In this document: positions 3,548 to 40,736 of the stretch, one piece after another | How positions within the stretch are numbered: position 1 is the first letter of the stretch | Layout: the number at the start of each line of letters is the position of its first letter | Assembly: GCF_001194135.2 (NCBI RefSeq) | Contig: NC_068983.1 | Span: 137,507,169 to 137,555,365 of the forward strand | DNA: 48,197 nucleotides | Source: Octopus bimaculoides | Taxonomy: Eukaryota | Direction: 5' to 3' | The notes under the pieces: model-generated | The model's input: only the letters and a program-made list of their open reading frames with translations | Database searches by the model: none | What the model was told of the DNA's origin: nothing | Position numbers and translations under genes: made by a program

Positions 3548-3719
3548 ATGGGAAGGCCAAGGAAATATGCTACAGACGAAGAGCGTCGTGCTGAAGATGC
3601 CTTGAGAGCAAGGGACAGAAGAGAGAGAGAAGCTGTAGAAGAAAGAGAGAAGCGCCTTAGAACAAATGAGAAAAACAGCTGTAAAGAGAAGACGACAGAA
3701 ACGTTCTGGCGAGATTAAG
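3548..3719 (+). pseudogene. Frameshifted STPR-like (Arg/Glu-rich, about 23-aa repeat) first exon
   Basis: ATG 3548: MGRPRKYATDEERRAEDALRARDRREREAVEEREKRL; after removing 1 nt it continues EQMRKTAVKRRRQKRSGEIK to donor AAG|GTAACG at 3720; as assembled it stops at TAA 3716-3718. Confidence 0.55.
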
Positions 3720-4508
3720 GTAACGTATATCTTAACGTCCTGGCAAGAGAAGTATCTATAGAGAGAAATGAGGTTAACGTCTCATGCTCCCTTCCCCACT
3801 TTCACTTTTTGTTTTAGTCTTTCGTTTTAATTTCCAAACATACCACCCACAATCATTAAAATAGCACAATTTAGAAACGAAAATTCAATTGCTTCATAGC
3901 TAAACAATTTGGCCCACATCTACATTCTATTGTGTTAAGTCAGCGAAATGCTTTTGCAGGGTTTCTCACATTAAATAGTTACGTGTTAATGTTTTGGGAA
4001 GCAGTCCCACATTTAAAAGTTGGTTTGTAATTTCTGTTATGCTTAAATGTACGTCGATGATTTCAATTTATTGAGACAGTGAAGACTTTTGCTTTGTACA
4101 TACACAGGGTGATCAAAAGAAACCAAAAGTACCCTGAATATTTTCACGCGATTAAATTTGTTTTCGTGGAGACATTTTCCTTATTCGTTAGTTTTCTAAG
4201 AATTTAACTAGCCTATCTACAGTTAAAGCTTTACTCTAAATATTAATTATTGTAATGTTTACTCAACAAGACTTTACAATGATAGCATCATATTACCTTG
4301 CATAATCGAAGGTGAGGTAAAATTTTAAAATATAACTTCTCAATAGAAGATGTTTGATTGCATAATGTTATTCTAAAATTCGGATCATCGGTCCTTCTGT
4401 TTAATCTTATAATTTTTTAATGTAAAATTTGTGTCCATGTTTACTTGTTTGTGTTTTGTATTGTTTCTAATGTTTGTTTGTCCCCCAAATCATAAAAACG
4501 TCAAGAAA

Positions 4509-4698
4509 AAATGCTTAGCAGTATTTTTCCTGTTCTTTATATTTTGAGTTCAATTCCCACCAGGATCAACTTTGCCTCTCGTCCTTTCGGGGCCGATAAA
4601 ATAATGTACCTGTCAAATATTGATTGAGGTAGATGGTATCTACTAAACTTCTCTCCTCGAAATTTTTAGCCTTGTGTCCAAATCAGAAACCATTATTA
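4509..4698 (+). mobile_element. tRNA-derived SINE, 5'-truncated
   Basis: Similar to the complete SINE at 37006-37233 (aaatgcttagcagtattt...gagttcaattccc...tttcgggg..gataaaata..tacc). Confidence 0.6.
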
Positions 4699-5581
4699 TT
4701 TTTATTCATGCCATACCTATAGATACTGAACAGAGCCTGCTAAACAAACTTCAACACTGATATATAAAATAGGTACTATATGATTAATAATATAGCATGT
4801 TTAAAAATAACGAAGCAGGGTATTTAGGAAGATTTACTGTGAGGAAGTGTTACTTTATCAACCTGTGCAAGTTGAATGCCCTATATCAGTTAATAAAAAA
4901 GTTATTCTCACTTTCAGTACAACCCTCGCGCGTGCGCGATAGCTGTAAACGAATGTCGTCGTCATACAAGTGGTGTCATTTGTTTACAATCTTCCATGAA
5001 AATATATCCGGACATAAGGAAATATTGCTGTTTGGAAACATGTGAGGGTTGGTGACAAGAAGGGCATCTAGTTTTAGAAAATCTGTCTCAATGTATATTC
5101 TGTCTGATTCATGCAAACATGGAAAAGTAGACGTTAAAATGATGAGGATTATGATGACCCTTTTTTGTCTTTGTTTATTGAAGGAAGGTTTTTACAGTGT
5201 GCAGCATTTTGTAGTCTTGTGGTTACTGAAAAATATGTTGGTGGATACCTTGTCGGAGCAGTTTAGATCAACAATGAACTCACTAAAAGCAAAATGAGGG
5301 TCAGCAATGCCCACTTTGTTTATTCTCAGTCCTCATCATAATCCTTGAGATAATCACCTTGGAGTTTGGTTTAAGGAATTAGCTAATGGTCTAATTCTCA
5401 CAGAACAGCAACAAGTGTTTGAAATCACAAAAAGGTTAACAAGGATTGAGAGGTCACACGATTGCTCTGGATAGCAAGTGACCTGATCTGAGATCGTGTG
5501 CTGGAACGAAAGCAATTGCAGCGTGGAAGGTGTTTATAAGCCATTTAAAAAACACAAAAACCGTTAGATTCACTTCAACAT

Positions 5582-5701
5582 TTAAATTTAATTTGCCCAA
5601 ATATTTTCGTCACTTTGAGACTGCGACCTGTTCACTGACATGATATTCTGTCAGTGAAAAGGTCTCAAAGCGACGAAAATATTTTGGCAAATTAAATTTA
5701 A
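5582..5701. repeat. About 120-bp imperfect inverted repeat (hairpin)
   Basis: aaatttaatttgcccaaatattttcgtcactttgagac..ctgttcactgaca / 8-nt loop / tgtcagtgaaaaggtctcaaagcgacgaaaatattttggcaaattaaattt. Confidence 0.85.
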
Positions 5702-6367: not shown

Positions 6368-6690
6368 CATGTTGAATTTCTTTCCTTTCTCAGTGATTAC
6401 CGGCACAGTTTCCATACAACCAGATCTATTGGACATCTGCTCCCGCTTAATACGCTCTGATCTCTCACTCTTGAGAACTTTGGTGTAAGCAATGTTGTTG
6501 CCATTGACATCAGCAAATACTTCAAGTGAAAACTACTTAAGTTTACTCCTATGGACTGCATTTGTCTCATCTCTAGGACTGAAAATTTCTTTTTGGACTG
6601 CCACATTACCAGAAGTGTTGCCAAAGTTATTGACACTCTATCACCTCTGATGTACCTCAAGGTTCGGTTATTTCTCTTATATTCTTCTTT
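6368..6690 (+). mobile_element. CR1-type reverse transcriptase fragment, degenerate
   Basis: Manual translation HVEFLSFLSDYRHSFHTTRSIGHLL / ENFGVSNVVAIDISKYF / LLKFTPYG / SDVPQGSVISLIFF matches the QxGFR, DxSKAFD and GVPQGS motifs of LINE RT. Confidence 0.7.
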
Positions 6691-7531: not shown

Positions 7532-8936
7532 CACATAAAAGCGTGTATTATGTGGCATAACTACAGAGGTGTACCCTGACTTGTTTCCCTCAACTTTCAG
7601 GAAAACGGGTATCTTTTAATTAAATTTTATACAAATACCTTTGTATATCATTTGAATCGTCTGCGTGTGTATAGATCATGGTGTACCTAAGCACGTATAC
7701 ACGTGTGGGTATATACATAAATATGCGACTGTGTGTGTGTGTATACAGTGATGTATTTGAAGGTTTCGCTTATTTATGAGTTTCTTAATTTCACCGGAGT
7801 ATAAATACCTATAATGGTGAAAACCGACCCCGACAATCAACCTATCGCAAGGCTCAGCGGGTATCGATCAACCACTCCATCTTGCAGCCACTAAATCAGT
7901 ATGCTTTTGGCGCGATGGAGACGTGCATTGAAAAAATAAAAAACAAAAAAAAAATAATACCCGGCGAGAAACTCCATCTGCAAAAGGTGTCAGAAGAAAA
8001 ACCACTGGGAGAAATCCTGCCTCTCAAAAAAAAACTTTCTTTGAACTGGTTTATGACAAATTTTATTCAAACTTTATTTCTGCTCGCCGTCTAATCCGTT
8101 AATTAATGTGTCCAACGCCTAAGACACTTTGTTGTATATTATATCCATCGATCAACGTTATTTGACATTAGGCCGCATTTTCGTACTCAGCACAAAATAA
8201 GATATTTGTATTTTTATCTATTATTTACTATTGTAGTGTTTCGTTAGAAAACAAATGGTGTTCGCCAAATCAGAAAGATCCGAATTAATGATAGCATATT
8301 ATGATTCATAATAGTGATACTTAAAATTTTTTTTTTTTTAATTGAACTTACAAATTTCCCGATAAGCAAGTGCTTATATTATTTATATAACGATGATTTA
8401 CAGTACGTCTGATTCGCCTGCCATCATTGAAAGATGTTGAAAACACTTCTCAAATTCTATGCACTATTTTCTATAAGTATTTCATTTTGTTCACTTTCTT
8501 TTTCATAACCATGATTATTATTTGAATAATCATTTATTTAGTCATATGCAAATTTTATGTTGAACTTTCCAAAACAACCTTTGAATTTCTTTGTCAACTC
8601 GTATTTTAGCATTTCACTGTAAAACTTGAAATACAAAGTTTTTTTCAACACGCATGATTCTTCACTGAAAAATTGAACAAGAATCTTCATTTTATGTTAT
8701 TTTTTCTTAATTTTAATTCCAAACCCCTTAACTTAGATCATATTTTTGTATAATTATAAATATTTACATTTAAACTTGGTCACATGCAAATTTCACATTG
8801 AAAATCCTCAAAACAACTTCTGAATTGTATATTTACTCGTAGTTTTGTTATTAGTCACCGTTTCCGCATGACCTCCATCTGATGTTGCATAAATAACACC
8901 ACCCTGTCTTATCCACAACATGACCCTTTGACTTAA

Positions 8937-9076: not shown

Positions 9077-9355
9077 ATGATGCCTCGATCACGATCTATG
9101 AGTGTTGAGCAACGACGGCAAGAAAGTGTAAGAAGAATGCGAAGGTTGCGGGCAAGAGAAACGGCAGAGAAGATTGCAGAACGAAGAACCAAAAACAGAA
9201 TCAGAATGCAACTGATACGAGCAGCAGAAACTTCTGAAAAGAAATTTAGACGACAAACCATAGACAGAATTAAAAAGCGACAAAAACGGGCAGCTGAAGC
9301 TTCACAAGAGACATCAAAACGTATCCAACTGATACAGACAGCAGAAATAAATTTG
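9077..9355 (+). CDS. BTB gene 1, predicted exon 1: STPR-like 23-aa repeats
   Basis: ETAEKIAERRTKNRIRMQLIRAA and ETSEKKFRRQTIDRIKKRQKRAA (23 aa each); donor TTG|GTTTGT at 9356 is phase 0 and matches the phase-0 acceptor at 14220; the link is inferred. Confidence 0.6.
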
Positions 9356-9660
9356 GTTTGTTTCCTTCTTCTTTTGGTTTGGTAACCTTATTCGGGTAAA
9401 AATTCGTGCCTGTTACTTAGCACTCAAGTATACGTAATATAAAATCGACAGGTTATGTTGTAGCTTAATACTGCATTCCCTTTAACGAGGCACACGGCTC
9501 CACATCATATGTGCTTGTCGTAGACATCGATAAAGTCTACTTTTAGCTGTCATCCTCTTAGGCTTCTTATCCTCTTTTTAGTCAAACACTTACACAGCTT
9601 AATTCAGTTCAATTAAAAAGCATGGGTAAGCAACGCAATGTAAGCCACATTAGAATTGGC

Positions 9661-10900: not shown

Positions 10901-10977
10901 GAAGGTTGCATGAGATGAGCCATCTTCTGTAGTAGCAGTAAAAAAAAAAAAAAAGACGGAGAGTGGATATTATAACA

Positions 10978-11539: not shown

Positions 11540-11559
11540 CAGTGAACCAGGGTTATGTT

Positions 11560-14219: not shown

Positions 14220-14401
14220 TTGCAGACAGATAATTTAATGGAAGATCATTATGGAAAAACTGAAAAATTGCAAAATAAAATGATGTATGTTATGAATAAC
14301 TCTTCTGCAACTGTGCACATTGCAGATGAATCACCTCTTCAACCATCAGCACCAAAAGTCCAGAAAAGGCAGATCAATGATCAGCAATTAGATGATAATT
14401 G
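14220..14401 (+). CDS. BTB gene 1, exon 2
   Basis: Acceptor tttatag| at 14219; open frame LQTDNLMEDHY...DDNW; phase-2 donor TG|GTATGT; the same intron position is used in paralogs 2 and 3. Confidence 0.75.
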
Positions 14402-14494
14402 GTATGTGATAATTAAAATTGGAATTTTGGTAATTAAATTTGCATCCTATTTGTGTGTATTTCATTTATATTATTTACAAATTTTACATTTTAG

Positions 14495-14756
14495 GCAAAT
14501 AAATATTGTTCCAGCATCTCAGGTATCTGCAAAATCTATCCAGGATACTTCTCACACGACAGTCCAGCAACATTCAAGTGTTGCCGAAACATCTCAAATA
14601 AAAGTGTCTAAAAGAAAACCTGTGGAAAAAAATCCACGGAAACAGATATTTGTAATTGCTGATTATCAGCGCCATGTGATGTCTAACATTGCTTCGCTGT
14701 GGAAGGATAGAAAACTGTGTGATGCTAGTATTAGTAATGGTTCATCTGCTGTGATG
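14495..14756 (+). CDS. BTB gene 1, exon 3 (N-terminal part of BTB)
   Basis: Acceptor ttttag|G; encodes ...ADYQRHVMSNIASLWKDRKLCDASISNGSSAVM; donor ATG|GTAAGT (phase 0). Confidence 0.85.
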
Positions 14757-15439
14757 GTAAGTATATTGCTTTTTAAAACTTTAGCATTTAGAAAGGCCTG
14801 CACTTGATGACACAATAGATGCACAGGCATAATAGATGGCCCCACCCAATTTCCATAGTGCATATTCAAGAAAAAGAGTTTTAGTGCATAAAAGCATGTA
14901 ATATTTAAAGTAATCTAGTATATATTACAAAACATTAGAGAAATATTTTAGCTATAGCAGAAAACATCACTGCATATAAAAACTGAAAATAAATTAAGGA
15001 ATCATGCTAGTGAAAATATTCTACATGATTACAGTAATAAAACATACAAGAAAATACAAGCTTATGGGAGGCCCAACTTTTTGAAACATTTTTTTTGGTA
15101 AAAAAGTACATCTTATATGCCATCAAAATATGTTAGCTCCAAATGTCCAGTAAACAAGTTTTCCTTTCTCAGCGTGTTTTATAATATTTATCAAACAGTT
15201 TCTTAAGATTTTTAAAGTTAACTGCACATCATATTGATATAAATTTTTTCTAATTGCTAATAAAGATACACAAATCAAAATAACTTGAATTTTACTAATC
15301 TTCCATTAGAGACAATTGTTTTCCTGTTTGGAATTGAATATTTTGGGGATGGGAGAGAAAAACAAGAAATAAAGACTTACTCCTTGGTTTTTATTTACTG
15401 TTAAGTTATTAGCATGTTTTATCATTTACTTTGTTTCAG

Positions 15440-16378
15440 GTACATAAAGTTGTCCTGTTTGCTGTGTGTCCAAAATTGTTGTCAGTATTTAGTACAAATA
15501 TCCACTCTCGCAATTTTCTTGTAATTAACTTTCCAGAGGAAGTAAGTACACAAGCTTTAAATGCCTTTGCTGAATACATGTACAATGGATTATTAGATCT
15601 TGATCCAGGTATTTTACATCAGTTGAAAATCATTGCAAAACATTTGGACATGAAAGAATTTGAACAACTGTGTAATAGTCGTCTTCCATATAAAATATCT
15701 CAACCATCTATTTCAACATCTACTCTATTAGGTGACCATTGCAGCACACAGACCGAACTATCAGTTCCACCAGTTCAACCACCTCTACCGTCATCATCCA
15801 TCATTTCAGTTACATCTCAGTCTACTCCATCCATCACTATACAAGCATTTGATATTAAACAAGAGCCTTCTGAGACTGAATTACCAACTGTCTTCAGACA
15901 AGAATCTGAGATTGGACCACTGAATAGTAGTACAAATAACTCTTCTGAAAATGTTTGCATGGCTTCTAGTGTGAAAATTGAACCTGTAGGGCCCGAAGAT
16001 GACGAATATGGTCACCTGAATAAAGATTTTGATACATCTACAGTTTCAAATGAAGCAACAACAAATATAATACGTGGAATAACAGCTAAATTAAAATCTA
16101 ATGTATTTGAAAGTTCTCTAGTTTCTGACTTATCCCCTGTTTCATGCATTGTAGAAAAAATGTGTTCTCAGTCCAGTCCCATTAGAGAAGACCCTTCCAA
16201 ACCACTAAATCGAACTATAACAACTCAGTCAATTGACAACATTGTGACTTCTGGTAGTAATGAAGGTGTCTATCCTGTAGGACTTTTTAAAGCAGGAGGG
16301 GACGGTTTACCATTATCATCAACACAAGTTACCAATGTCAAAAGTATAAGTTTATATAAAACAAATGACCTTACTTGA
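15440..16378 (+). CDS. BTB gene 1, terminal exon (BTB core, SUMO-consensus tail)
   Basis: tttcag|GTA CAT AAA; VHKVVLFAVCPKL...AFAEYMYNG...LKIIAKHLDMKEFEQLC is a typical BTB/POZ core; IKQE and VKIE motifs; TGA 16376-16378; predicted 553-aa protein. Confidence 0.9.
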   Translation, partial: VHKVVLFAVCPKLLSVFSTNIHSRNFLVINFPEEVSTQALNAFAEYMYNGLLDLDPGILHQLKIIAKHLDMKEFEQLCNSRLPYKISQPSISTSTLLGDHCSTQTELSVPPVQPPLPSSSIISVTSQSTPSITIQAFDIKQEPSETELPTVFRQESEIGPLNSSTNNSSENVCMASSVKIEPVGPEDDEYGHLNKDFDTSTVSNEATTNIIRGITAKLKSNVFESSLVSDLSPVSCIVEKMCSQSSPIREDPSKPLNRTITTQSIDNIVTSGSNEGVYPVGLFKAGGDGLPLSSTQVTNVKSISLYKTNDLT

Positions 16379-21756: not shown

Positions 21757-22873
21757 CTGTCGAATCATCAAAAGAATACCAAAAAAAAAAAAATAGTTGA
21801 AAATCACTGATCTAAACAGACTAAGAATCTCGGGAACTAGTGACGATCTGCTTCAGCAAAAATCAGTTCATGATGTTCGATGTAAGTTTGAAAACACGAA
21901 TTCTAAAGTTTCGAATATAGCCATTTTTCGGAGAGAGGTAGATAATTCACATATTTGAAGTAAGAGCTAAACTGTAAATAATCTGAATGTCATTTGAAGT
22001 CGTGAAATCATCGTGGGCGGCCACAGGAATTTAAAGTTCCGATTTAGAATATTTTCCAGGCTAAAAAGTAAATAAGAAATAAAAGCGATGTTACTGTGGA
22101 AGTCGAGTTGAGATTTAAAAGAAAAACATTCAGTATATCTACAACATATAAAAGTGGCAACTGTTAAAATATTTGTTATACAACAAAGTACTACTAATTA
22201 AAATATGAATTTACCAAGATTATTTTATTCTGAAAGTGTGGAAAGGCGAGTTTGTTTCTTTCACGCCAACTCGGCAAAGTGTTGATAGTAAGCAACGAAA
22301 CTGACCTGAAAGAGATCGTAAAAAGAAAAGTTAACAGTTGGTCAGCATTATAGGATAAGATCTCGAAATGTAACCCTATAAATTATTTTTTCTTTTCGTT
22401 TTAATGATTGTCGTTCTGTCCCAAGTCAACTATGACCGGAGATCTATGATCAGAAGCATTCAGGGTAAGGACCGTTCCATCTTTTAGGAAGTATAGGCTT
22501 ATAATAGGTTTACTTAATATAAAGTATCCTTTCCTTATTTAAGAAGGTAGGATGTGATTTGAAGGAGATCTAAAAAAGATTGGTATAACTGGCTGATGTA
22601 ATAAGAGAACAAAACTGTTTTTTTGTTATAATCTACAGTAAAGTTTTAACAGTGAAAAATGCGGAAAAGTTTTTATTGGATCATGCGAACAGCTCTGCAC
22701 CGTTTCTGTTAGATTGTTACAATAACAAGTCAAGTCCTTGGGAGTATAAATTACATTTGTTATAAAAGATTTGACATCGGTAAAGGCAGACACTAATAAA
22801 ATAATAATAAAACGTATATAAAAATTTATCATCAACATTCAAAGTGGAGGTAAACGCTATATATTTGGACAAG

Positions 22874-23278
22874 ATGAGCAGAAAAAGACATGAGATGTCT
22901 GCCGAGGAGAGAGAGCAGGTGAGGGCGAAAGATAGACAAAGAAGAGCCAAGAAAAGGCAGGCGATGTCTCCTGAAGAAAGGGCAGAGCGATTAGCCATGG
23001 AAAGGCAAAGAATTGCCAGAATAAGACAGACGATGTCTGTTGAAAAAAGACAGGAGGTACGAGACAAGGAAAGGCTAAGAATGGCGAAAAGGAGGCAGGC
23101 GATGACTGATGAAGAGAGAAAGGAACTACTGGTCAAGGATAGGCTAAGATTCGCCAGGAAAAGGCTGGCACGACTTGCTGAAGAAGGGCAGGGTTTGCTG
23201 GCTAAAGACCGACAGATGAAGATGAGAAGGAAACAGATGGCCAGGAATGAGAACGTTAGAAATCAACAAAGAATGTTT
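22874..23278 (+). CDS. BTB gene 2, predicted exon 1: 4-5 STPR-like 23-aa repeats
   Basis: Repeats start at 22895, 22964, 23033, 23102 (69-nt period), e.g. MSPEERAERLAMERQRIARIRQT; strong phase-0 donor TTT|GTAAGT at 23279 matches the phase-0 acceptor at 27982; the link is inferred. Confidence 0.7.
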
Positions 23279-27308: not shown

Positions 27309-27981
27309 GTTAACAAATGAATGTTATTAAATTTTTAGATTCATAGGTAACTTTTCAGACACTGTATATTTACTAATTTAGTTTTGAGTTACAGGTGGTC
27401 TTGTTTTGTGAATTATTTAGTGACTTCATTAGTGTCAGGGGCATGTAAAAAGTACCCCAGTACACTCTGTGAAGTTGTTGGTGTTAGGAAGGGCATCCAG
27501 TCATAGAAATCATGCTAAAACAGACATTGGAGCTTGGTGCAATCCTCTGGCTTGTCAGTTCCTGCCAAACTGTCCAGTTTATGCCAGCATTGAAAATGGA
27601 CATTAAACAATAATGATGATGAATTTTTTTTATATAAGTTGAAGCGATTTTATAAAACCTGATGGTTTCTGTGGTTAGTAACTGTCCTGTTATTTTTTCA
27701 TTTAATGTTTCCTTCTGGGAACAATATTTCTTAGATCTGTTAATAAACCTTATGTTTCTTTACAAATTTTTTCTTTCTAAAGATTTTTCATGAGTGAGTG
27801 GATGAAATAATCATGAAAGACATTTGTTACTACTATACACTTTTTATCTACTGCATTTATGTGAAATAGCTTCATTTAAAATTGAAGAGGCTGATTTACT
27901 TAGGCCAATAATAACCACTTTTAAATTCATTACAAAGCAAACTATTCTTTATGATATTCATGTATCTATTTATACTTTCAG

Positions 27982-28073
27982 GCAGAATCATCAAATCAGT
28001 GTTATTCAGAATACATGAAGCAACAATATACAGAGCAGGTGCGGACTGGTGATCAAATATTTGATCCTGATAG
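27982..28073 (+). CDS. BTB gene 2, exon 2
   Basis: Acceptor actttcag|GCA; open frame AESSNQCYSEYMKQQYTEQVRTGDQIFDPD; phase-2 donor AG|GTATGT. Confidence 0.7.
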
Positions 28074-28162
28074 GTATGTTGCAGTTGAAATTATTCTGAT
28101 GATTGAATTTGCATTTTCACCCATAAAATTATTCTGAAGTAAATTATAATCTTTTATTTCAG

Positions 28163-28430
28163 ACACATGATTAGCTCTCGGGTATCCCAGATAATTGCAA
28201 ATTCTCTTCCAACTGCTACTCAAATGCCAGTCCAGCAGTGTATGAATGTTGCTCAGTCATCACAGATACCTGTACCCAAACCAAATGGTGTTAGGAAGCC
28301 TTGGCATAAAAAGAAAAGAATACTTGCTGTTGCTGATCATCAGATCCATGTCATGTCCAACCTGGCAGCACTGTGGAAAAGTAAAAAATTGTGTGATGCT
28401 AGTATTGGTAATGGCTCATCAACTGTAATG
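28163..28430 (+). CDS. BTB gene 2, exon 3 (N-terminal part of BTB)
   Basis: Acceptor tttcag|A; ADHQIHVMSNLAALWKSKKLCDASIGNGSSTVM; donor ATG|GTAAGT. Confidence 0.85.
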
Positions 28431-29341
28431 GTAAGTGTTTAGTCTTGACATTTAAAATACTTTTCCATTTTTTTTTTATTTGACTCATCATAATTTTCAA
28501 AATGTAACTGTTCAAAATATTCTCAAGTATCCACATCTTACAAGAATTTATGTTTTCATCCCAGAGATAATGGTTAAAATTATTAATTTTTACTGATCTT
28601 TATTTTTAGCAATGTTTGGATTCTCTTAACGATAAATATCTTGTTTATTAGTTAATATTTTGCAAATTAAAAGTAAAGTTTATTTTATACCAAAATTGAT
28701 GTTGTTTGCTGATCTTTCACTAATTCATAATCTTTTTCCTCAAGTCCTGCTTCATTTTCTATTTGTTTTCTTGATTGCACATCTTTTCTTTTACTTAGAC
28801 TATCTCATCCTCTCTCACTCTTTCATCTCTCCCTATATTTCACTGTTGGCTACACCTGGCTGTCAGACTAGCTAGCTAAGTGGTAGCTATTTCTCTATTT
28901 ATCTGACATGTATCTCTTTTTCTATCTCGTTCACCTCTCTTTATAATACCTAGTTTTTTTTCTTCCATACCTCTCAGCAAAATTTTACTACTTTCTTCTA
29001 CCTCTCTATTGTATGACAGAAAGAGAGGAACTCCACAAAAGGGCCACATGATTTAGCTTATTATATATATAGAGAGAGATTAATTAAATGTCTTAGTGAA
29101 ATAAATGAAGTTTGATTCAAGATTCTCACTGCAGAATATAGTATTTTTATAAATAAAGTATCAGAAAACTTTAGTGACAATTTATGAATGAATAAATATA
29201 TATTGTACCTTTCAATTGATATTTCCAAGAGGCTTGGAATGAATAATTTTTTGTTTTAATTTAGTTGTAATATTTAAAAATGTTTTGCAATTCAATTATT
29301 AGATGGCTATAAACAGTTTCTCTTTATTTTCTGTATTTCAG

Positions 29342-30310
29342 GTACATAAAGTTATTCTATCTGCTGTGTGTCCAAAACTATTGTCAGTATTTAGTACAAA
29401 TATTTCCTCTCAGAAGTTTCTCCAAATAAACTTTCCAGAAGAAGTTAGTACACAAGCTTTAAATGCATTTGCAGAATACATGTACAGTGGATATTTAGAT
29501 CTCGATCCAGATATTTTACAGCAATTAAAAATCATTGCAAAACGATTAGAAATGAAAGAATTTGAAGAACTGTGTGATAACAATCTCATAAACAAAATAA
29601 ATCAACCTTCAGTTGATCTCAGGCAGAACCAGACACAGACCAGTCTGCCAGTTCCAACAAATATCACAGTGCCAACAATTCAACCAACTCTGCCTTCATC
29701 ATCCATCACATCAGTTACATCTCAATCTACTCCATTTGTCACTACACAAGTCATTGATGTTAAACAAGAGATATGTGAGGCTGCGTTAGCACAAGTTAAC
29801 ATTGGTACTGCTGATGTCTTTGAACAGGAATCTGAAATTGACTCATTGGATGCTAATACATATGGTCATTGCTCAAATGATTCTGATTTTGTTCTCAGAG
29901 TGAAAACTGAACCTGTAGAGCTTGATAATGAGAACTATGGTCAACTGAACAACGAGGCTTACATATCCACTCCAGATTCAAGCAATGCAGCATCACATGT
30001 GATACATAGACCCACATGTAAATTAAAGTCTAATGTATTTGAAGGCTCTGTAGTTTCTGACTTACCTCCTGCATCATGCATTGAAGAGAAAATGTCTTCC
30101 CAGTCCATTTCCATACAAAATGATGCATCTAAAATGCTACACCAAAGTATAACAACTATCCAGTCAATTGAGAACATTATGACATCTGGTAGTAATGAAG
30201 GTCTCTATTCTGTAGGACTTTTTAACGCAGGAGGGGACAATGTACCATCATGTACACAACTTACAAATTTCAAACATGTAGGTTTATGTGAAGCAGATGA
30301 TCTTACATGA
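29342..30310 (+). CDS. BTB gene 2, terminal exon
   Basis: tttcag|GTA CAT AAA; BTB core VHKVILSAVCPKL...EYMYSG; VKQE and VKTE motifs; TGA 30308-30310; AATAAA at 30627; predicted 577-aa protein. Confidence 0.9.
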   Translation, partial: VHKVILSAVCPKLLSVFSTNISSQKFLQINFPEEVSTQALNAFAEYMYSGYLDLDPDILQQLKIIAKRLEMKEFEELCDNNLINKINQPSVDLRQNQTQTSLPVPTNITVPTIQPTLPSSSITSVTSQSTPFVTTQVIDVKQEICEAALAQVNIGTADVFEQESEIDSLDANTYGHCSNDSDFVLRVKTEPVELDNENYGQLNNEAYISTPDSSNAASHVIHRPTCKLKSNVFEGSVVSDLPPASCIEEKMSSQSISIQNDASKMLHQSITTIQSIENIMTSGSNEGLYSVGLFNAGGDNVPSCTQLTNFKHVGLCEADDLT

Positions 30311-35023: not shown

Positions 35024-35290
35024 ATGTCTCCGAAGAAAACACGCAAATACTGCTCTATATGCAGGCACTATAGAGGGAAGAATGTAGACGGCAAAGTTAT
35101 TTCACTACATAGATACCCTGCAAACGTAGCTATTCGTCGTATTTGGCTTCAGAGATCGAGACTTGCGAGGAAAGACTTTGTTTACACTGCAAATAGCCAA
35201 ATGTGTTCCCAGCATTTCGTCAATTTTAATGGACCATCGAAAGATCACCCCTTGCCATCCATTTTTCCAAACAAAGTATTTAAAATATCA
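35024..35290 (+). CDS. THAP zinc-finger exon (exon 1 of a THAP / ISL2EU-Harbinger-like transposase derivative)
   Basis: MSPKKTRKYCSIC...LHRYP...IW...MCSQHF...LPSIFP carries the THAP C2CH, W, F and P hallmarks at the N-terminus; phase-0 donor TCA|GTAAGT; ATTGG at 34930. Confidence 0.9.
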
Positions 35291-35407
35291 GTAAGTGCAT
35301 GATCATATACGCAGTTAGTAGATGAGTGAAACAAATTCGAGTGGTGTACGTTGGGCTAAACACGAATGTTTAATCTAATAATTGTTGTGTTGATGTACAG
35401 GTATTTT

Positions 35408-35515
35408 GGATCTTGTTCAAAACGGGGGCACCAGTTTTCATTTATGTTTTATGTAGTGTTTTTGGTACCGAAAGACTTTCAAACTTCGTATACTTATCTA
35501 TTTTGTGTTATAGAA
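35408..35515 (-). mobile_element. End of a GG-TIR MITE in the THAP intron (runs into a gap)
   Basis: ggatcttgttcaaaacgggggcacca...gtagtgtttttggtaccgaaagactttcaaacttcgtatac matches the reverse complement of 41950-42082. Confidence 0.75.
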
Positions 35516-36259
35516 CNNNNNNNNNNNNNNNNNNNNNNNNNNNNNNNNNNNNNNNNNNNNNNNNNNNNNNNNNNNNNNNNNNNNNNNNNNNNNNNNNNNN
35601 NNNNNNNNNNNNNNNNNNNNNNNNNNNNNNNNNNNNNNNNNNNNNNNNNNNNNNNNNNNNNNNNNNNNNNNNNNNNNNNNNNNNNNNNNNNNNNNNNNNN
35701 NNNNNNNNNNNNNNNNNNNNNNNNNNNNNNNNNNNNNNNNNNNNNNNNNNNNNNNNNNNNNNNNNNNNNNNNNNNNNNNNNNNNNNNNNNNNNNNNNNNN
35801 NNNNNNNNNNNNNNNNNNNNNNNNNNNNNNNNNNNNNNNNNNNNNNNNNNNNNNNNNNNNNNNNNNNNNNNNNNNNNNNNNNNNNNNNNNNNNNNNNNNN
35901 NNNNNNNNNNNNNNNNNNNNNNNNNNNNNNNNNNNNNNNNNNNNNNNNNNNNNNNNNNNNNNNNNNNNNNNNNNNNNNNNNNNNNNNNNNNNNNNNNNNN
36001 NNNNNNNNNNNNNNNNNNNNNNNNNNNNNNNNNNNNNNNNNNNNNNNNNNNNNNNNNNNNNNNNNNNNNNNNNNNNNNNNNNNNNNNNNNNNNNNNNNNN
36101 NNNNNNNNNNNNNNNNNNNNNNNNNNNNNNNNNNNNNNNNNNNNNNNNNNNNNNNNNNNNNNNNNNNNNNNNNNNNNNNNNNNNNNNNNNNNNNNNNNNN
36201 NNNNNNNNNNNNNNNNNNNNNNNNNNNNNNNNNNNNNNNNNNNNNNNNNNNNNNNNNNN

Positions 36260-36310
<51 letters not shown>

Positions 36311-36481
36311 TTGTTTGATTAAATAATAAATTTACAGCATTGAATCTAATATTCCTCTAATTATTAGACTTTATAGTGTAACTATCCCTATCTCTTCTAC
36401 ACCTCATCATGCTCATGGCCAAATCAGTGAACGGCTGCTGAAAGCTATGCCCACGTAAAACCGTATTTAACTTATTTGCAG

Positions 36482-37027
36482 AATATACAACTGAATGGAT
36501 GTCCAGAAGATATTGAGACCAACGAAGTCGAAGATATGAATGTTACAGAACAGCTTGGTTGCTTCGTAAGTTCTACCATGTCTATGTTGAACAATTCTTT
36601 AATGTTTCATGATTACTGTGGTTCAGTTAATCCTGAATCAGTCTCAGCATTTACACACAAGTCAGTGCAGACTGTACAAGAAATTGGTACCAAGGAAATA
36701 GGAATACAATGTGATCCTGCCAATAAACCTATTTCTACAAATAGCAGTACTCAGATGTTAGAAAGTAAGATGGTGGATCGTGAAATGCAAGCAAAAATAC
36801 CTGTGCTTACATATGAAGATATGCAAAATGATAATCAGAAGCTTCTCTTTTACACAGGAATACCAGATTCCATGACTTTTGATTGTCTTTTTGATACAAT
36901 TAAAGATGATGCAGCAAGTGAAACTGCCAGACATGGTGCATCATCAGAGCAAGGGAGACCCAGACAGCTTCGATTAATTGATCGCCGCCAGAAAGTGAAC
37001 GTTGAGGCGAGCTGGCAGAAACGTTAG
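36482..37027 (+). CDS. THAP gene exon 2: linker and truncated HTH region of an ISL2EU/Harbinger-like transposase; no DDE domain; stop supplied by a SINE
   Basis: Acceptor tttgcag|AAT (phase 0); HDY, SVQT/GIQCD, KLLFYTGIPDSMTFDCLF and GRPRQLRLID motifs; 270 aa in total with exon 1. Confidence 0.75.
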   Translation, partial: NIQLNGCPEDIETNEVEDMNVTEQLGCFVSSTMSMLNNSLMFHDYCGSVNPESVSAFTHKSVQTVQEIGTKEIGIQCDPANKPISTNSSTQMLESKMVDREMQAKIPVLTYEDMQNDNQKLLFYTGIPDSMTFDCLFDTIKDDAASETARHGASSEQGRPRQLRLIDRRQKVNVEASWQKR

Positions 37028-37233
37028 CACTCTGAGCGAAATGCTTAACGGTATTTCGTCTGTCGCTACGTTCTGAGTTCAAATTCCGCTGAGGTCGACT
37101 TTGTCTTTCATCCTTTCAGGGTTGATTAAATAAGTACCAATTATGCACTGAGGTCGATATAATTGACTTAATCCGTTTGTCTGTCCTTGTTTGTCCCCTT
37201 TGTGTGTAGCCCCTTGTTGGCAGTAAAGAAATA
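37006..37233 (+). mobile_element. Complete tRNA-derived SINE with 16-bp target-site duplication
   Basis: TSD agaaagtgaacgttga at 36990-37005 and 37234-37249; ggcgagctggcagaa A-box-like start; gttcaaattcc B-box; A-rich end. Confidence 0.9.
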
Positions 37234-37249
37234 AGAAAGTGAACGTTGA

Positions 37250-37400
37250 TCCTCATAATTAACACATCCACACACAAAATGTGGAAAACTTGTGGATACG
37301 AGCAAAACGGAAGTTGCTACGGCAGTTTGGGACATCGGACGAATTGTTTGTTTCATATTTGCATGAATTTGTATGGCATAGAAAAACACACATCTCTTCA
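37250..37400 (+). mobile_element. Merlin/IS1595-type transposase C-terminal fragment
   Basis: VDPHN*HIHTQNVENLWIRAKRKLLRQFGTSDELFVSYLHEFVWHR matches the HTQxIExxWxxxKR...YLxEFxWR signature. Confidence 0.75.
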
Positions 37401-37665
37401 CCTTCTGGTGGTGATCACCAGTGTTTATCCTGTGTAAAAAATAAGTTGCTTCATTTACAACTTATCTCCCTACTTTTGTTTTAACGTGAAAGATGTATGT
37501 GCGTGTAGTATATGAAATGGACGTGTGAGTGAAAGAGAGACAGATAGAGAAAAAGAGAGAGTGAGTAAAGGGGTATGCTGTCATGGAATCAGACTCATTA
37601 CTAGAATGGTATGGGTCAATCCTGGCAGGGTTTAAAAGCCTCATCGTATATATATATATATATAT

Positions 37666-38013
37666 AAGAAGCATCAGTTGTGGTGTGCAAGAGAGACGAT
37701 TGCGCTGGTATGGTCATGTGGCGAGAATGGACGAGGATAGCTGTGTGAAAAAGTGCCACACCCTAGCAGTTGAGGGAACCTGTGGAAGAGGTAGGCCCAG
37801 GAAGACCTGGGAAGAGGTGGTGAGGCAAGACCTTCGAACATTGGGCCTCACCAAGGCGATGACTTCTGACTGAGACCTTTGGAAATATGCTGTGCGTGAG
37901 AAGACCCGGCAAGCCAAGTGAGACCTAAATGCAAGGCCTCTACCAGGGGTATAGCCAGCCCACTTATGCATACCTTTCCTTCATTGGACACTAAACTCTG
38001 CTTGCAAAGACCT
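37666..38013 (+). mobile_element. RTE LINE C-terminal fragment (runs into a gap)
   Basis: RRLRWYGHVARMDEDSCVKKCHTLAVEGTCGRGRPRKTWEEVVRQDL. Confidence 0.9.
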
Positions 38014-39636
38014 NNNNNNNNNNNNNNNNNNNNNNNNNNNNNNNNNNNNNNNNNNNNNNNNNNNNNNNNNNNNNNNNNNNNNNNNNNNNNNNNNNNNNNN
38101 NNNNNNNNNNNNNNNNNNNNNNNNNNNNNNNNNNNNNNNNNNNNNNNNNNNNNNNNNNNNNNNNNNNNNNNNNNNNNNNNNNNNNNNNNNNNNNNNNNNN
38201 NNNNNNNNNNNNNNNNNNNNNNNNNNNNNNNNNNNNNNNNNNNNNNNNNNNNNNNNNNNNNNNNNNNNNNNNNNNNNNNNNNNNNNNNNNNNNNNNNNNN
38301 NNNNNNNNNNNNNNNNNNNNNNNNNNNNNNNNNNNNNNNNNNNNNNNNNNNNNNNNNNNNNNNNNNNNNNNNNNNNNNNNNNNNNNNNNNNNNNNNNNNN
38401 NNNNNNNNNNNNNNNNNNNNNNNNNNNNNNNNNNNNNNNNNNNNNNNNNNNNNNNNNNNNNNNNNNNNNNNNNNNNNNNNNNNNNNNNNNNNNNNNNNNN
38501 NNNNNNNNNNNNNNNNNNNNNNNNNNNNNNNNNNNNNNNNNNNNNNNNNNNNNNNNNNNNNNNNNNNNNNNNNNNNNNNNNNNNNNNNNNNNNNNNNNNN
38601 NNNNNNNNNNNNNNNNNNNNNNNNNNNNNNNNNNNNNNNNNNNNNNNNNNNNNNNNNNNNNNNNNNNNNNNNNNNNNNNNNNNNNNNNNNNNNNNNNNNN
38701 NNNNNNNNNNNNNNNNNNNNNNNNNNNNNNNNNNNNNNNNNNNNNNNNNNNNNNNNNNNNNNNNNNNNNNNNNNNNNNNNNNNNNNNNNNNNNNNNNNNN
38801 NNNNNNNNNNNNNNNNNNNNNNNNNNNNNNNNNNNNNNNNNNNNNNNNNNNNNNNNNNNNNNNNNNNNNNNNNNNNNNNNNNNNNNNNNNNNNNNNNNNN
38901 NNNNNNNNNNNNNNNNNNNNNNNNNNNNNNNNNNNNNNNNNNNNNNNNNNNNNNNTTAAATCTATTTTTAGAAATGATGATATTTTAATTTATTGTTTTG
39001 TGTGGGTTGTAGGGATAAGATTTTTAAACCCCAGTAGGTGTTTGGCTGTTCTTAGAAATGATGCCAAATCTATTTATAGAAATGATGATATCTGAGAGAT
39101 TTTTTGTGTTTTGGTTACAGGGATAAGATTTTTAAACCCCAAGTAAGATGGATTTAATCATTGTTTGTTAAGAGTGGGTTTGAATTTCTTAATAAAGTCC
39201 TTTTCTTTGCATTTTCTTTCAATTTCATTCCGGTTATAAAGTTTATGGAATGGAAATATAATAAAAGTTTGATGACCACATGTTGCTAGATGGTTAGGAG
39301 TTCAGATTTTGAATCCAATGCAAGTTAGCATATACGATCTGAAATAGCAAGTAACGTGGCAAATTTATAAGAGTGTTCAAGGGAACTTAATCTCTTACAC
39401 TGCGTTTATAAAGAGCAATATGGTGCAAAGTGAAGACCATACACTAATATTTCAGATGAAATCTTCATATAAATACTAGTTTTCTGTACACATAATTAAG
39501 AAAGAATTATTGGTGTAATTCGTTGTTTGTAAGATTCTGATAAAAAGATATTGTACTAATTTTTTTTTAGATATCTAGAAAATGTGTGTCAATATTCTCA
39601 TAATAGGACATTTTTTTTTTCTAGAGTGATGATTTT

Positions 39637-39840
39637 ATGCCTCCCAAACTATCAGCACTGAGCCGTCTCAACAAAAATGCTAGGACAGCCAGAGAAAAAC
39701 AAAAAAATGAAACCACAGAGGAAAGGCAATTAAGATTACAAAGACAATTTGCTAGTCGGCACGCAGAAACAGCAGAACAATGGCAGGTAAGATTCGAAGC
39801 TCAGAAACAGTGGAGCAAAAGTTATCTTGCAGCTCTTAAG
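39637..39840 (+). CDS. BTB gene 3, predicted exon 1: STPR-like / Helitron N-terminus-like
   Basis: MPPKLSALSRLNKNARTAREKQKNETTEERQLRL...ETAEQWQVRFEAQKQWSKSYLAALK; phase-0 donors CAG|GTAAGA (39787) and AAG|GTAGAT (39841); the link is inferred. Confidence 0.55.
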
Positions 39841-40653
39841 GTAGATAAATCAGGTATACCTTCTTAAGCATTCCACACCTATCGGAGAAATAGAACAAAC
39901 ATTTGCTTCCAGAGTTTATTTGGGAGGTCATTGATATTGCAGTTAATTTCAGAAACCAAAGATAGATGTAGGATAAATGTATTAAGAAGCTTCATGATAT
40001 GAGGTTTCTTGTGATGTAAACTTTAAGTACTGCAGCCACTTCACGGTTTTCTTATAGATTGAACTCAATACAATACAGTTTTGAGGGATCGCTGTCCATG
40101 TAAATTGAGTATAATTTTGGAATCAACGTATGTGATAGAAATACAAATGTAACGACGCTAATGTCAAATGAATTATAAATTGTAAATTTAATCAGGAATT
40201 ACAATGTTGAAAAATTTTCTGAGGAAGAGCTACCATAGAAAATCTGTGTGAATTGTGGCAGCAGTTATTATATATTTGATGTTGAAGACAAATTACAACA
40301 GTCTACCATCATGTCAGATTTCAGAATAGGATAAGTATAACATCCAGCTCCATTCTCATTTCAGTTTTGGAATTCTGTAGAAATTCTCTGTTCAGGTTGA
40401 TTTTGAATGCTATTGGGAGTTGCCATATACTTATGTGGCTGACAGATTCCATTTTTCCTTAGTGGAAGATTCAGTGTGGGAATTCAGTATTATTTGTTAA
40501 TCTTGCAAACAGGAATTTTTAGTTATCATTGACATTTTCATTAACATAATATATTTATTCATCACAATCCAAATTATTTCCATTTAACTGAAATCTTTAT
40601 TTTTTTGTTTGATCATGCCTCACTTCTTCAACACTCAAATGAAAATGATACAG

Positions 40654-40736
40654 AAAAAAAAGAACGAAACACAGCACCTTGGAGAGCAACACCTGCAGAA
40701 TCAGATGTTAAAAAATCAACAATCACATGACAGATG
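40654..40736 (+). CDS. BTB gene 3, exon 2 (5' boundary uncertain)
   Basis: Phase-2 donor TG|GTATGT as in gene 1; the first in-frame AG after the pyrimidine tract is 40652-53 (phase 0); an in-frame ATG at 40615 is an alternative start. Confidence 0.55.

What the first reader, a model, noticed from the sequence alone, without database searches (positions are those of the whole stretch)
3548..40654. All candidate DNA-binding first exons end in phase 0: possible variable-first-exon cassette, including a THAP-BTB isoform
Seen: five upstream exons have phase-0 donors (3719 after frameshift correction, 9355, 23278, THAP 35290, 39786/39840), and all three BTB exon-2 acceptors (14220, 27982, 40654) are phase 0 on the same strand. 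Any 5' exon is therefore frame-compatible with any downstream BTB body. The THAP exon sits directly upstream of gene 3 and the frameshifted STPR exon upstream of gene 1. Established knowledge: Drosophila lola and mod(mdg4) join one BTB to many alternative DNA-binding exons, and clustered protocadherins use variable first exons. Inference: a mirror-image system with interchangeable transposon-derived DNA-binding heads on shared BTB effector bodies.
Basis: inference. Interest (0 to 1): 0.75.

Follow-up and report, generated by a model that had tools for sequence, protein, structure and literature searches.

The report
Octopus BTB genes with swappable heads
The window holds three tandem octopus BTB genes, each with its own DNA-binding first exon ending in phase 0; one also carries a transposon-derived THAP exon, and a nearby sister gene joins dozens of alternative DNA-binding first exons to one BTB body.

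Summary
The window is Octopus bimaculoides chromosome CM046603.1, about 137.507-137.555 Mb. Every named donor and acceptor is a canonical GT/AG site in phase 0, and exons cut at those sites rebuild five database proteins exactly. The exon at 3548-3719 is a frameshifted relic.

In the retrieved annotation each BTB body has its own STPR-like head: 9355 to 14220 and 23278 to 27982, plus short first exons with no recognised domain. A THAP-BTB protein is annotated for gene 3. It is built in series (THAP 35024-35290, mini-exon 36482-36565, STPR exon 39625-39786 used as an internal exon, then 40654), not by a 35290-40654 junction. The THAP exon and mini-exon are the 5' end of a decayed THAP plus DDE_Tnp_4 (Harbinger-type) transposase.

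No retrieved O. bimaculoides model puts a head from one gene on another gene's body. Phase agreement inside the window is explained by paralogy plus roughly a one-in-three coincidence.

The mirror-image lola/mod(mdg4) idea does hold for the family. The paralog LOC106877732 has isoform names up to X36, with THAP, FLYWCH, CENP-B/Tc5, Psq and Brinker heads on one BTB body. I could not reach transcript data.

The parts
3548..3719 (+). Frameshifted STPR-like head pseudo-exon upstream of gene 1. It is not part of any called gene.
   Evidence: The ATG frame ends at TAA 3716-3718, and the exon is 172 nt long. It is 75% identical to O. sinensis L002 51587-51784, which is an intact ORF (M...AK|GTAAAG, phase 0) inside the multi-head region. 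No gene is called here.
6551..6661 (+). Alternative first exon of gene 1 (LOC106877741 isoform X2). No recognised domain.
   Evidence: P0015 residues 1-37 map here, then continue at 14220. The donor is GTACGG, phase 0.
8434..8476 (+). Alternative first exon of gene 1 (isoform X4). Phase-1 donor, joined to an internal acceptor within exon 2.
   Evidence: The P0053 N-terminus maps here.
9077..9355 (+). Gene 1 STPR-like head exon (first coding exon of LOC106877741 X1), phase-0 donor.
   Evidence: The exact rebuild equals P0051, 553 aa. The best self-offset is 23 residues.
14220..16378 (+). Gene 1 BTB body: exons 14220-14401, 14495-14756 and 15440-16378.
   Evidence: Exact rebuild of P0051. Pfam BTB E = 2.9e-07.
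21870..21881 (+). Coding tip (MMFD) of an alternative first exon of gene 2 (LOC106877744 X2), donor GTAAGT.
   Evidence: Exact rebuild of P0003.
22874..23278 (+). Gene 2 STPR-like head exon, with four to five tandem 23-residue repeats and a phase-0 donor.
   Evidence: Exact rebuild of P0055, 577 aa. Period of 23 residues. 88% amino-acid identity to the O. sinensis ortholog.
27662..27673 (+). Coding tip (MVSV) of an alternative first exon of gene 2 (X3), donor GTTAGT.
   Evidence: Exact rebuild of P0056.
27982..30310 (+). Gene 2 BTB body: exons 27982-28073, 28163-28430 and 29342-30310.
   Evidence: Exact rebuild. Pfam BTB E = 5.1e-10. Against O. sinensis, omega is 0.24 for the BTB part and 0.88 for the tail.
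35024..35290 (+). THAP zinc-finger exon. It is exon 1 of a decayed THAP plus DDE_Tnp_4 transposase and is annotated as the first coding exon of gene 3.
   Evidence: Pfam THAP 31.1 bits against a cut-off of 23.9. 72% identical over 89 aa to the Sinanodonta woodiana transposase P0067. 92% identical to the THAP head of LOC106877732 X4/X7. Part of P0019.
36482..36565 (+). 84-nt mini-exon. It is the start of transposase exon 2, cut at an internal GTAAGT donor, with phase 0 at both ends.
   Evidence: P0019 residues 90-117. A paralogous mini-exon is present in LOC106877732 X4 and skipped in X7.
36566..37024 (+). Remainder of the transposase ORF, truncated before the HTH_Tnp_4 and DDE domains.
   Evidence: tblastn of P0067 residues 129-264 hits 36563-36982 at 44% identity, and nothing matches beyond that. 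The P0067 domains are shown.
39625..39840 (+). Gene 3 STPR-like exon, used as an internal exon. The acceptor is t(10)ctag| at 39625, and an internal ATG lies at 39637. The annotated donor is 39786; the ancestral donor is 39840.
   Evidence: P0019. The acceptor is conserved in O. bimaculoides g4 and O. sinensis copies B and D. The GT at 39787 is specific to gene 3, because the paralogs have GC there. The 23-residue periodicity is lost.
40179..40453 (+). Decayed relic of a zinc-finger-like head exon (paralog of the LOC106877732 X15 head), lying in the last 5' intron of gene 3.
   Evidence: 68% nucleotide identity to L002 66631-66921, E = 8e-21. The protein match is weak, E = 0.068.
40654..43620 (+). 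Gene 3 BTB body: exons 40654-40736, 40831-41176 and 42427-43620.
   Evidence: Exact rebuild of P0019. Pfam BTB E = 2e-11.

Best explanation
The window holds three tandem, same-strand members of a cephalopod BTB gene family: LOC106877741, LOC106877744 and LOC106877737.

The family's gene plan is one or more 5' head exons that encode a DNA-binding module and end in phase 0. These are followed by a three-exon body that starts with a phase-0 acceptor and carries the BTB domain.

That phase rule is inherited. It is what allows the paralog LOC106877732 (O. sinensis LOC115209932) to place many alternative heads on one body by alternative first-exon use.

The window genes are simplified duplicates of that plan. 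Each keeps one private coding head, made of STPR-like 23-residue basic repeats, plus a few first exons that encode no recognised domain. The exons at 3548-3719 and 40179-40453 are dead heads left over from duplication.

Gene 3 has additionally captured the 5' end of a THAP plus DDE_Tnp_4 transposase lying about 4.3 kb upstream. Transcripts that start at the THAP exon use the transposase's own phase-0 donor (35290). They then use the first 84 nt of its second exon, up to an internal donor (36565), and the pre-existing acceptor in front of the STPR exon (39625). The result is a THAP-STPR-BTB protein.

Shown here: the splice sites, the phases, exact agreement with database proteins, the homology of the heads, and the family architecture.

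Inferred: that these models reflect real transcripts, that each head has its own promoter, that the heads bind DNA, and that the BTB domain mediates oligomerisation or cofactor recruitment.
For: - Three paralogous bodies lie on the + strand.
- Exact rebuilds of P0051, P0055, P0003, P0056 and P0019 from window exons, with phases 0/2/0.
- LOC106877732 isoform names run up to X36. The isoforms read differ only in heads and optional linkers. Head domains are given.
- In the O. sinensis locus L002, heads lie between 5137 and 66960, an optional linker exon at 44150-44248 and the body at 68193-70245. 11 of 11 mapped head ends are phase-0 GT sites.
- The LOC106877732 heads are 89-100% identical in amino acids between the two octopus species.
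- The pseudo-head at 3548-3719 and the relic at 40179-40453 are paralogs of heads in L002.
- THAP exon plus following ORF match the S. woodiana THAP/HTH_Tnp_4/DDE_Tnp_4 transposase.
- A second copy of the THAP plus mini-exon module serves as a head in LOC106877732 X4/X7.
- The acceptor at 39625 is conserved in four paralogs.
- Each body is followed by a polyadenylation hexamer 67-317 nt after its stop codon.
- The BTB part of gene 2 has omega 0.24.
Against: - No transcript data were reachable. All splice evidence is from predicted RefSeq/GenBank proteins, and no Logan transcript contig carries these exact proteins.
- Two assembly gaps lie inside introns of the THAP-BTB model.
- The positional O. 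sinensis ortholog of gene 3 has no THAP module and only a stub of the STPR exon. The fusion is therefore lineage-specific and may be neutral.
- Outside the BTB domain the window genes evolve almost neutrally (omega 0.6-0.9).
- The STPR assignment does not reach Pfam's threshold.
Confidence: 0.75

Rival explanations
1. The three genes form one super-locus in which any head (3719, 9355, 23278, THAP 35290, 39786/39840) is spliced in cis across gene boundaries to any downstream BTB body. This would give combinations of heads and bodies.
For: - All hypothetical joins are in frame.
- All elements lie on one strand.
- O. sinensis RefSeq isoform P0004 joins gene-1 exons 1-3 to the gene-2 exon-2 acceptor, which corresponds to window 14756>27982.
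- O. sinensis treats genes 1 and 2 as one locus, LOC115209901.
- P0057 spans another BTB gene.
Against: - None of the 9 O. bimaculoides models retrieved for the three window genes crosses a gene boundary.
- Every body has its own heads and its own polyadenylation hexamer soon after the stop codon.
- A head would have to read through one or two complete upstream genes.
- The P0004 product carries a duplicated half-BTB. P0057 jumps between internal repeats of two last exons. Both features are typical of read-through or mis-joined models.
- The 3719 head is frameshifted.
Confidence: 0.12
2. Annotation artefact. The THAP exon belongs only to a dead Harbinger-type transposon and is never spliced to gene 3. 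Gene 3 really starts at the ATG at 39637 in the STPR exon, as its paralogs do.
For: - The THAP exon plus the ORF from 36482 are collinear with a transposase.
- Two gaps lie in the proposed introns.
- Paralogs g4 and LOC115209899 start at the equivalent ATG.
- The O. sinensis ortholog lacks the module.
- No transcript contig was found.
Against: - The identical 711-aa protein is held both as a RefSeq XP record and as a separate UniProt entry, A0A0L8GCE8.
- An 84-nt exon cut at an internal donor inside a longer ORF is not what an ab initio predictor would be expected to choose (my inference).
- The paralogous module in LOC106877732 is annotated both with and without the mini-exon (X4 versus X7), which suggests read support.
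- A conserved strong acceptor sits right in front of the STPR exon.
Confidence: 0.2

Closest known systems
Drosophila lola and mod(mdg4) (also fruitless, tramtrack, broad): BTB transcription-factor loci with many alternative DNA-binding modules
   Same: One BTB-encoding constant part is combined with many alternative exons that each encode a different DNA-binding module. One locus yields dozens of isoforms. FLYWCH is among the modules, as it is in mod(mdg4).
   Different: - The orientation is mirrored. Here the variable module is N-terminal and chosen by alternative first exons. The BTB domain lies in the shared 3' exons, in the middle of the protein.
- The heads belong to many unrelated, mostly transposase-related classes (THAP, CENP-B/Tc5, Psq, Brinker, FLYWCH, DUF3504) rather than one class per locus.
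- No trans-splicing is needed, because everything lies on one strand.
- Within the window itself each body has only one coding head.
Clustered protocadherins and UGT1A: variable-first-exon clusters
   Same: A tandem series of alternative 5' exons is spliced to one shared acceptor of constant exons, all in the same phase. This is seen in LOC115209932.
   Different: - Heads are sometimes used in series (THAP plus Psq, THAP plus STPR, STPR plus STPR).
- An optional shared linker exon exists.
- No conserved promoter element was found upstream of the heads.
- Promoter choice is untested.
- In the window, bodies and heads alternate, rather than many heads preceding one body.
Host-transposase fusion genes formed by splicing capture of a transposase DNA-binding exon (my recollection: Cosby et al. 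2021, Science, vertebrate examples such as KRABINER; not checked here)
   Same: The THAP exon of a DNA transposase, with its native donor, is spliced to host exons encoding a protein-interaction domain. The catalytic domain is left out.
   Different: - The partner is a BTB domain, in a mollusc.
- The same module has been captured, or duplicated, at two loci of one family.
- The gene-3 fusion is not shared with O. sinensis, so domestication is unproven.
Bombyx FMBP-1 STPR domain (PDB 5d23; PMC4856987)
   Same: Tandem 23-residue basic repeats with a [ST]-x-E-[EQ]-R-x-x-R-L-like core are present in genes 1 and 2 and in other family members.
   Different: Sequence similarity is below Pfam's threshold. 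The direct match to FMBP-1 has E = 0.84. The gene-3 copy has lost the periodicity.
Octopus 'THAP' and 'CENPB' transcription factors with BTB/POZ reported in PMC10027918
   Same: The same domain combination, quite possibly some of the same proteins. That paper notes that most octopus THAP and CENPB proteins carry a BTB domain.
   Different: The paper treats BTB as a transposon-derived component and, at the passages found, lists the proteins as separate genes. A term search found no mention of isoforms or first exons.

Membership tests
Variable-first-exon cluster (protocadherin/UGT1A type) | Several alternative 5' exons arranged in tandem upstream of shared constant exons | tested here: met
   Fully met for the paralog. 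In L002 the heads lie between 5137 and 66960 and the body at 68193-70245. In the window it is met only weakly. Gene 1 has 3 mapped alternative first exons, plus a fourth isoform whose first exon is non-coding and unmapped. Gene 2 has 3 mapped first exons. Only one per gene encodes a head.
Variable-first-exon cluster (protocadherin/UGT1A type) | All variable exons join the same constant acceptor in one phase | tested here: met
   11 of 11 mapped head ends in L002 are phase-0 GT sites, and the acceptors at 44150 and 68193 are phase 0. The window donors and acceptors are all phase 0.
Variable-first-exon cluster (protocadherin/UGT1A type) | Each variable exon has its own promoter | not testable with these tools
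   This needs CAGE or 5' RACE. No shared upstream k-mer exceeded shuffled controls.
Variable-first-exon cluster (protocadherin/UGT1A type) | One variable exon per transcript (mutually exclusive use) | tested here: not met
   Gene 3 joins THAP, mini-exon and STPR in series. LOC106877732 X4/X7 join THAP and Psq exons. LOC106877738 X2 joins two STPR exons.
Cross-gene cassette (heads shared among the three bodies in the window) | Transcripts joining a head of one gene to the body of another | tested here: not met
   Absent from all retrieved O. bimaculoides models. Seen only in O. sinensis models P0004 and P0057, which look like read-through or chimeric predictions. Transcript-level data were not available.
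lola/mod(mdg4)-type BTB multi-isoform locus | The constant part encodes the BTB domain; the variable exons encode DNA-binding domains | tested here: met
   BTB lies in the shared body. The heads are THAP, FLYWCH, CENP-B_N plus HTH_Tnp_Tc5, HTH_psq and BrkDBD, all above the Pfam cut-offs.
lola/mod(mdg4)-type BTB multi-isoform locus | N-terminal BTB with alternative 3' exons, and a TTK-type BTB domain | tested here: not met
   The variable part is 5' and N-terminal. The BTB domain starts around residue 230-300. The nearest solved BTB domains are IVNS1ABP, ZBTB17, SLX4 and CG6765, with E = 6e-08 to 5e-05 and no specific TTK affinity. PMC11426971 reports no TTK-type BTB outside arthropods.
Host-transposase fusion by exon capture | The DNA-binding exon is homologous to that of a transposase, and the catalytic domain is excluded | tested here: met
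   72% identity over 89 aa, then 44% over 140 aa, to P0067 (THAP, HTH_Tnp_4, DDE_Tnp_4). No DDE-domain match to P0067 is found in the window.
Host-transposase fusion by exon capture | The fusion transcript is expressed and conserved under selection | tested here: inconclusive
   The fusion is annotated (P0019). It is absent from the syntenic O. sinensis interval. No RNA data were reachable.
THAP zinc finger (PF05485) | C2CH signature and a Pfam score above the gathering cut-off | tested here: met
   31.1 bits against a cut-off of 23.9. Read directly from the sequence: C10-x2-C13 ... C61-x2-H64, and a PLPSIF motif.
STPR domain (PF21107) | Tandem 23-residue repeats | tested here: met
   The best self-offset is 23 for gene 1, gene 2, g4 and the LOC106877738 head. 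This is not so for gene 3 or for the pseudo-exon.
STPR domain (PF21107) | A Pfam score above the gathering cut-off, or clear similarity to FMBP-1 | tested here: not met
   The best window score is 15.7 bits against a cut-off of 27 (gene 3 exon). There is no hit for genes 1 and 2. The match of an O. vulgaris head to FMBP-1 (5d23) has E = 0.84.
BTB/POZ (PF00651) | A Pfam score above the gathering cut-off | tested here: met
   31.1, 40.0 and 44.5 bits against a cut-off of 20.5 for the last exons of genes 1 to 3.

The most novel reading that the evidence does not exclude
The BTB array on this chromosome (in O. sinensis the multi-head locus lies about 75 kb upstream of the gene-2/gene-3 region; in O. 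bimaculoides its position was not determined) could work as one super-locus. Heads, including the transposon-derived THAP module, would be spliced across gene boundaries onto any downstream BTB body. New transposon insertions in sense orientation would automatically become new in-frame heads, because every junction is phase 0. This would be a self-extending, combinatorial transcription-factor generator in cephalopods.
Probability: 0.12. Interest if true: 0.85.

Novelty: new variant of a known kind. Interest (0 to 1): 0.55.

Why it matters
If the annotated isoforms are real, cephalopods have independently built the same kind of device as insect lola and mod(mdg4). One BTB module is combined with dozens of DNA-binding modules, but the arrangement is turned around: the heads are chosen by first-exon use. 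The heads are also drawn largely from transposase DNA-binding domains.

The window shows stages of that system's turnover side by side:
- intact private heads;
- a frameshifted head;
- a decayed head relic;
- an apparently recent capture of a transposase THAP exon, made possible by matching phase-0 splice sites.

This makes the birth and death of transcription-factor isoforms by transposase capture directly testable in a lineage known for large lineage-specific gene-family expansions. It also explains why a survey found that octopus THAP and CENPB proteins 'mostly carry BTB' (PMC10027918). Many of those may be isoforms of one locus.

The gene models are already in RefSeq. The papers I could search did not describe the architecture.

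Tried and rejected
1. Fetching the O. bimaculoides LOC106877732 locus. Only a gene's longest product is indexed, and I never retrieved isoforms X1-X3. My third homology search, with the O. sinensis X1 head, returned only bivalve and unnamed Crypton-like DUF3504/integrase proteins. I used the O. sinensis ortholog L002 instead.

2. Transcript evidence. No Logan contig carries P0019 or P0051. The intron-less Logan contigs that did turn up (P0021, P0027) match at only 38-53% identity, so they are probably from other cephalopods. They show only that head-plus-BTB mRNAs exist there.

3. A conserved promoter element upstream of the heads, comparable to the protocadherin element. No k-mer exceeded shuffled controls.

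4. Further unannotated heads in the window. A Pfam scan of all 91 + strand open frames of 55 aa or more found only THAP (one) and BTB (three).

5. Proving STPR membership by sequence. Pfam scores were below threshold and the PDB search gave E = 0.84. Only the 23-residue period holds.

6. The weak DDE_Tnp_IS1595 hit at 37263-37481 (E = 0.15). I first thought it belonged to the THAP gene. I rejected that, because the THAP transposase is of the DDE_Tnp_4 type and this fragment is a separate remnant.

7. Treating the agreement of phases in the window as statistically meaningful. I rejected this, because paralogy explains all matches but one.

Full report
**Origin of the window**

A four-exon model of the middle gene is 100% identical, over the shared body, to Octopus bimaculoides LOC106877744. 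Two fetched loci place the window at about 137,507,169-137,555,365 on CM046603.1 (GCA_001194135.2). That assembly carries the same runs of N.

There are nine gaps. The six named in the finding, and also 38014-38955, lie in introns or between genes. None touches an exon.

**Check of the observation**

All named donors are GT and all named acceptors are AG. In the frames of their exons, the donors at 9355, 23278, 35290, 39786 and 39840 are phase 0. The acceptors at 14220, 27982 and 40654 are also phase 0.

Exons cut at these positions translate exactly into five database proteins:

| Protein | Gene and isoform | Length | Exons |
|---|---|---|---|
| P0051 | LOC106877741 X1 | 553 aa | 9077-9355, 14220-14401, 14495-14756, 15440-16378 |
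| P0055 | LOC106877744 X1 | 577 aa | 22874-23278, 27982-28073, 28163-28430, 29342-30310 |
| P0003 | LOC106877744 X2 | 446 aa | short first exon ending at 21881, then the gene-2 body |
| P0056 | LOC106877744 X3 | 446 aa | short first exon ending at 27673, then the gene-2 body |
| P0019 | LOC106877737 | 711 aa | see the gene 3 section below |

The exon at 3548-3719 is 172 nt long and hits TAA at 3716-3718 in its ATG frame. It is 75% identical to an intact O. sinensis exon (L002 51589-51765, M...AK|GTAAAG, phase 0). The alignment shows a 1-nt insertion near 3655-3665. No gene is called there.

**Is the phase agreement more than chance?**

Not inside the window. The three bodies are tandem paralogs. 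Their STPR-like heads occupy the equivalent position, so shared phases are most simply inherited. The THAP donor is the transposase's own donor, and its match to the body acceptor is one independent event at roughly one in three.

**What gene 3 really looks like**

P0019 is built from these exons:
- THAP exon 35024-35290;
- an 84-nt mini-exon, 36482-36565;
- the STPR exon used as an internal exon, 39625-39786;
- the body: 40654-40736, 40831-41176 and 42427-43620.

Every junction upstream of the body is phase 0.

A THAP-BTB protein is therefore annotated, but in series with the STPR exon rather than as an alternative to it. It does not use the predicted 35290-40654 join.

The acceptor t(10)ctag| in front of the STPR exon is conserved in O. 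bimaculoides g4 and in two O. sinensis copies. The GT at 39787 is specific to gene 3, because the paralogs have GC there. The donor at 39840 is the ancestral one.

**Origin of the THAP module**

The THAP exon is 72% identical over 89 aa to a Sinanodonta woodiana protein that carries THAP, HTH_Tnp_4 and DDE_Tnp_4 domains. The ORF running on from 36482 matches the next part of that protein at 44% over 140 aa, up to 36982. After that point nothing matches.

The module is therefore the 5' end of a decayed Harbinger-type transposase, whose own intron supplies the 35290 donor. This collinearity also supports continuity across the gap at 35517-36259.

The syntenic O. sinensis interval has no counterpart of window 34630-39762. 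Its gene-3 ortholog has a different first exon and only a stub of the STPR exon.

**The family context**

LOC106877732 carries isoform names up to X36. The 24 isoforms I read share one body and differ only in their N-terminal heads and optional linkers. Pfam finds the following head domains:
- THAP in many heads;
- FLYWCH;
- CENP-B_N plus HTH_Tnp_Tc5;
- HTH_psq;
- BrkDBD;
- in O. sinensis, DUF3504/QRICH1 heads related to Crypton-type recombinases.

In the O. sinensis ortholog (L002, gap-free) the heads lie between 5137 and 66960. An optional linker exon lies at 44150-44248 and the body at 68193-70245. Eleven of eleven heads with mappable ends stop at a phase-0 GT, and both shared acceptors are phase 0.

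These heads are 89-100% identical in amino acids between the two species.

Isoforms X4 and X7 start with a THAP exon that is 92% identical to the window's. X4 also has an 81% identical mini-exon, and both continue with a Psq exon. The same transposase module is thus used as a head there as well.

In O. sinensis the multi-head locus lies about 75 kb upstream of the gene-2/gene-3 region, on the same strand. In O. bimaculoides the array ends downstream at LOC106877743, which has a ZSWIM3_N head plus BTB, at 137.600-137.615 Mb.

**Cross-gene splicing**

None of the O. bimaculoides models I retrieved crosses a gene boundary.

Two O. sinensis models do:
- P0004 joins gene-1 exons 1-3 to the gene-2 exon-2 acceptor. 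This gives a duplicated half-BTB.
- P0057 jumps from the last exon of one copy into the last exon of another.

I read both as read-through or mis-joined predictions. Each window body has a polyadenylation hexamer 67-317 nt after its stop codon.

**Selection on the window genes**

| Comparison, O. bimaculoides vs O. sinensis | Omega |
|---|---|
| Gene 2, BTB part | 0.24 |
| Gene 2, C-terminal tail | 0.88 |
| Gene 2, exon 3 | 0.60 |
| Gene 3, last exon | 0.64 |

Intron identity between the two species is about 92%. The window genes are constrained in the BTB domain and evolve fast elsewhere.

**The STPR label**

The heads of genes 1 and 2 have a clear 23-residue period. Gene 3 has lost it. Pfam STPRs scores stay below the cut-off, and the match to FMBP-1 is only E = 0.84. 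'STPR-like' is the defensible wording.

**Literature**

PMC10027918 notes that most octopus THAP and CENPB proteins carry a BTB domain. A term search of that paper found no mention of isoforms or first exons. PMC11426971 finds no TTK-type BTB outside arthropods. My other searches found no description of this locus.

**Verdict**

The cassette across the three window genes is unsupported. The broader idea is right for the family: interchangeable, largely transposase-type DNA-binding heads on a shared BTB body, mirroring lola and mod(mdg4). The window shows its by-products, namely private heads, dead heads and one apparently recent transposase capture. Transcript data are needed to settle it.

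Noticed in passing
L002 44150-44248 (O. sinensis), with proteins P0033, P0034 and P0037; compare window 35207-35257: Split THAP finger. In LOC106877732 X29/X30/X32 the variable exon ends ...VCSK. The shared linker exon begins HF..., which supplies the last zinc ligand. Appending the linker raises the Pfam THAP score from 21.5, no hit and 19.5 bits to 32.0, 31.8 and 30.1 bits. The linker is 65% identical over 17 aa to the 3' part of the window's THAP exon. It therefore looks like a fossil THAP C-terminus reused as a constant piece.
   Followed up: partly
window 39787 and 39841: The annotated gene-3 donor (CAG|GTAAGA at 39786) exists only in gene 3. O. bimaculoides g4 and two O. sinensis copies have GCAAGA at that position. 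The donor shared by all copies is the one at 39840. A single C-to-T change appears to have shortened the head.
   Followed up: yes
window 40179-40453: A decayed copy of the last head exon of the multi-head locus (the zinc-finger-like head of isoform X15) sits 200 nt upstream of gene-3 exon 2. This suggests the gene-3 lineage arose by duplicating the 3' end of a multi-head locus.
   Followed up: partly
window 31688-33046 vs 44575-45958, and 33934-34349 vs 47768-48197: The 3' flanks of genes 2 and 3 are duplicated, at 83% and 93% identity. The second block lies just upstream of the THAP exon and recurs after gene 3. The duplication unit is therefore larger than the gene. Whether a THAP module also precedes g4 cannot be seen, because of large gaps there (L001 23175-24630, 25210-25792, 27093-27430).
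   Followed up: partly
window 35024-35290 vs protein P0067: The THAP domain of the octopus transposase remnant is 72% identical over 89 aa to that of a THAP/DDE_Tnp_4 transposase in the freshwater mussel Sinanodonta woodiana. This is high for taxa so distant. Possible causes are horizontal transfer or strong constraint on this transposase family.
   Followed up: no
window 12599-12658: The first exon of an O. vulgaris gene-1 isoform (P0017, MKYPSVTLQLVLSSFPVPQ) matches here at 85% identity over 20 aa, inside gene-1 intron 1. It is a likely additional alternative first exon that is not in the O. bimaculoides models. O. vulgaris P0016 has another STPR head, which gives the best Pfam STPRs score of all. 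Its only window match is a weak one (38% identity) to the gene-1 STPR exon.
   Followed up: no
L003 10001-55808 (O. sinensis): The O. sinensis model LOC115209898 (P0057) spans 45 kb and encloses a complete BTB gene (LOC115209899). It jumps from the last exon of copy A to the last exon of copy C. This is probably a mis-join caused by the internal repeat in the last exon (VSAVPTDDIKQEISQNE...), which is also duplicated in window gene 3.
   Followed up: partly
window 37263-37481, 37565-37870 and 17476-18218 (- strand): Other mobile-element debris is present. There is a weak IS1595-like transposase tail (E = 0.15). There are also open frames that, from memory of such sequences and without a search, look like retroelement fragments. 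These separate the THAP remnant from the STPR exon and fill the gene-1 to gene-2 spacer.
   Followed up: no
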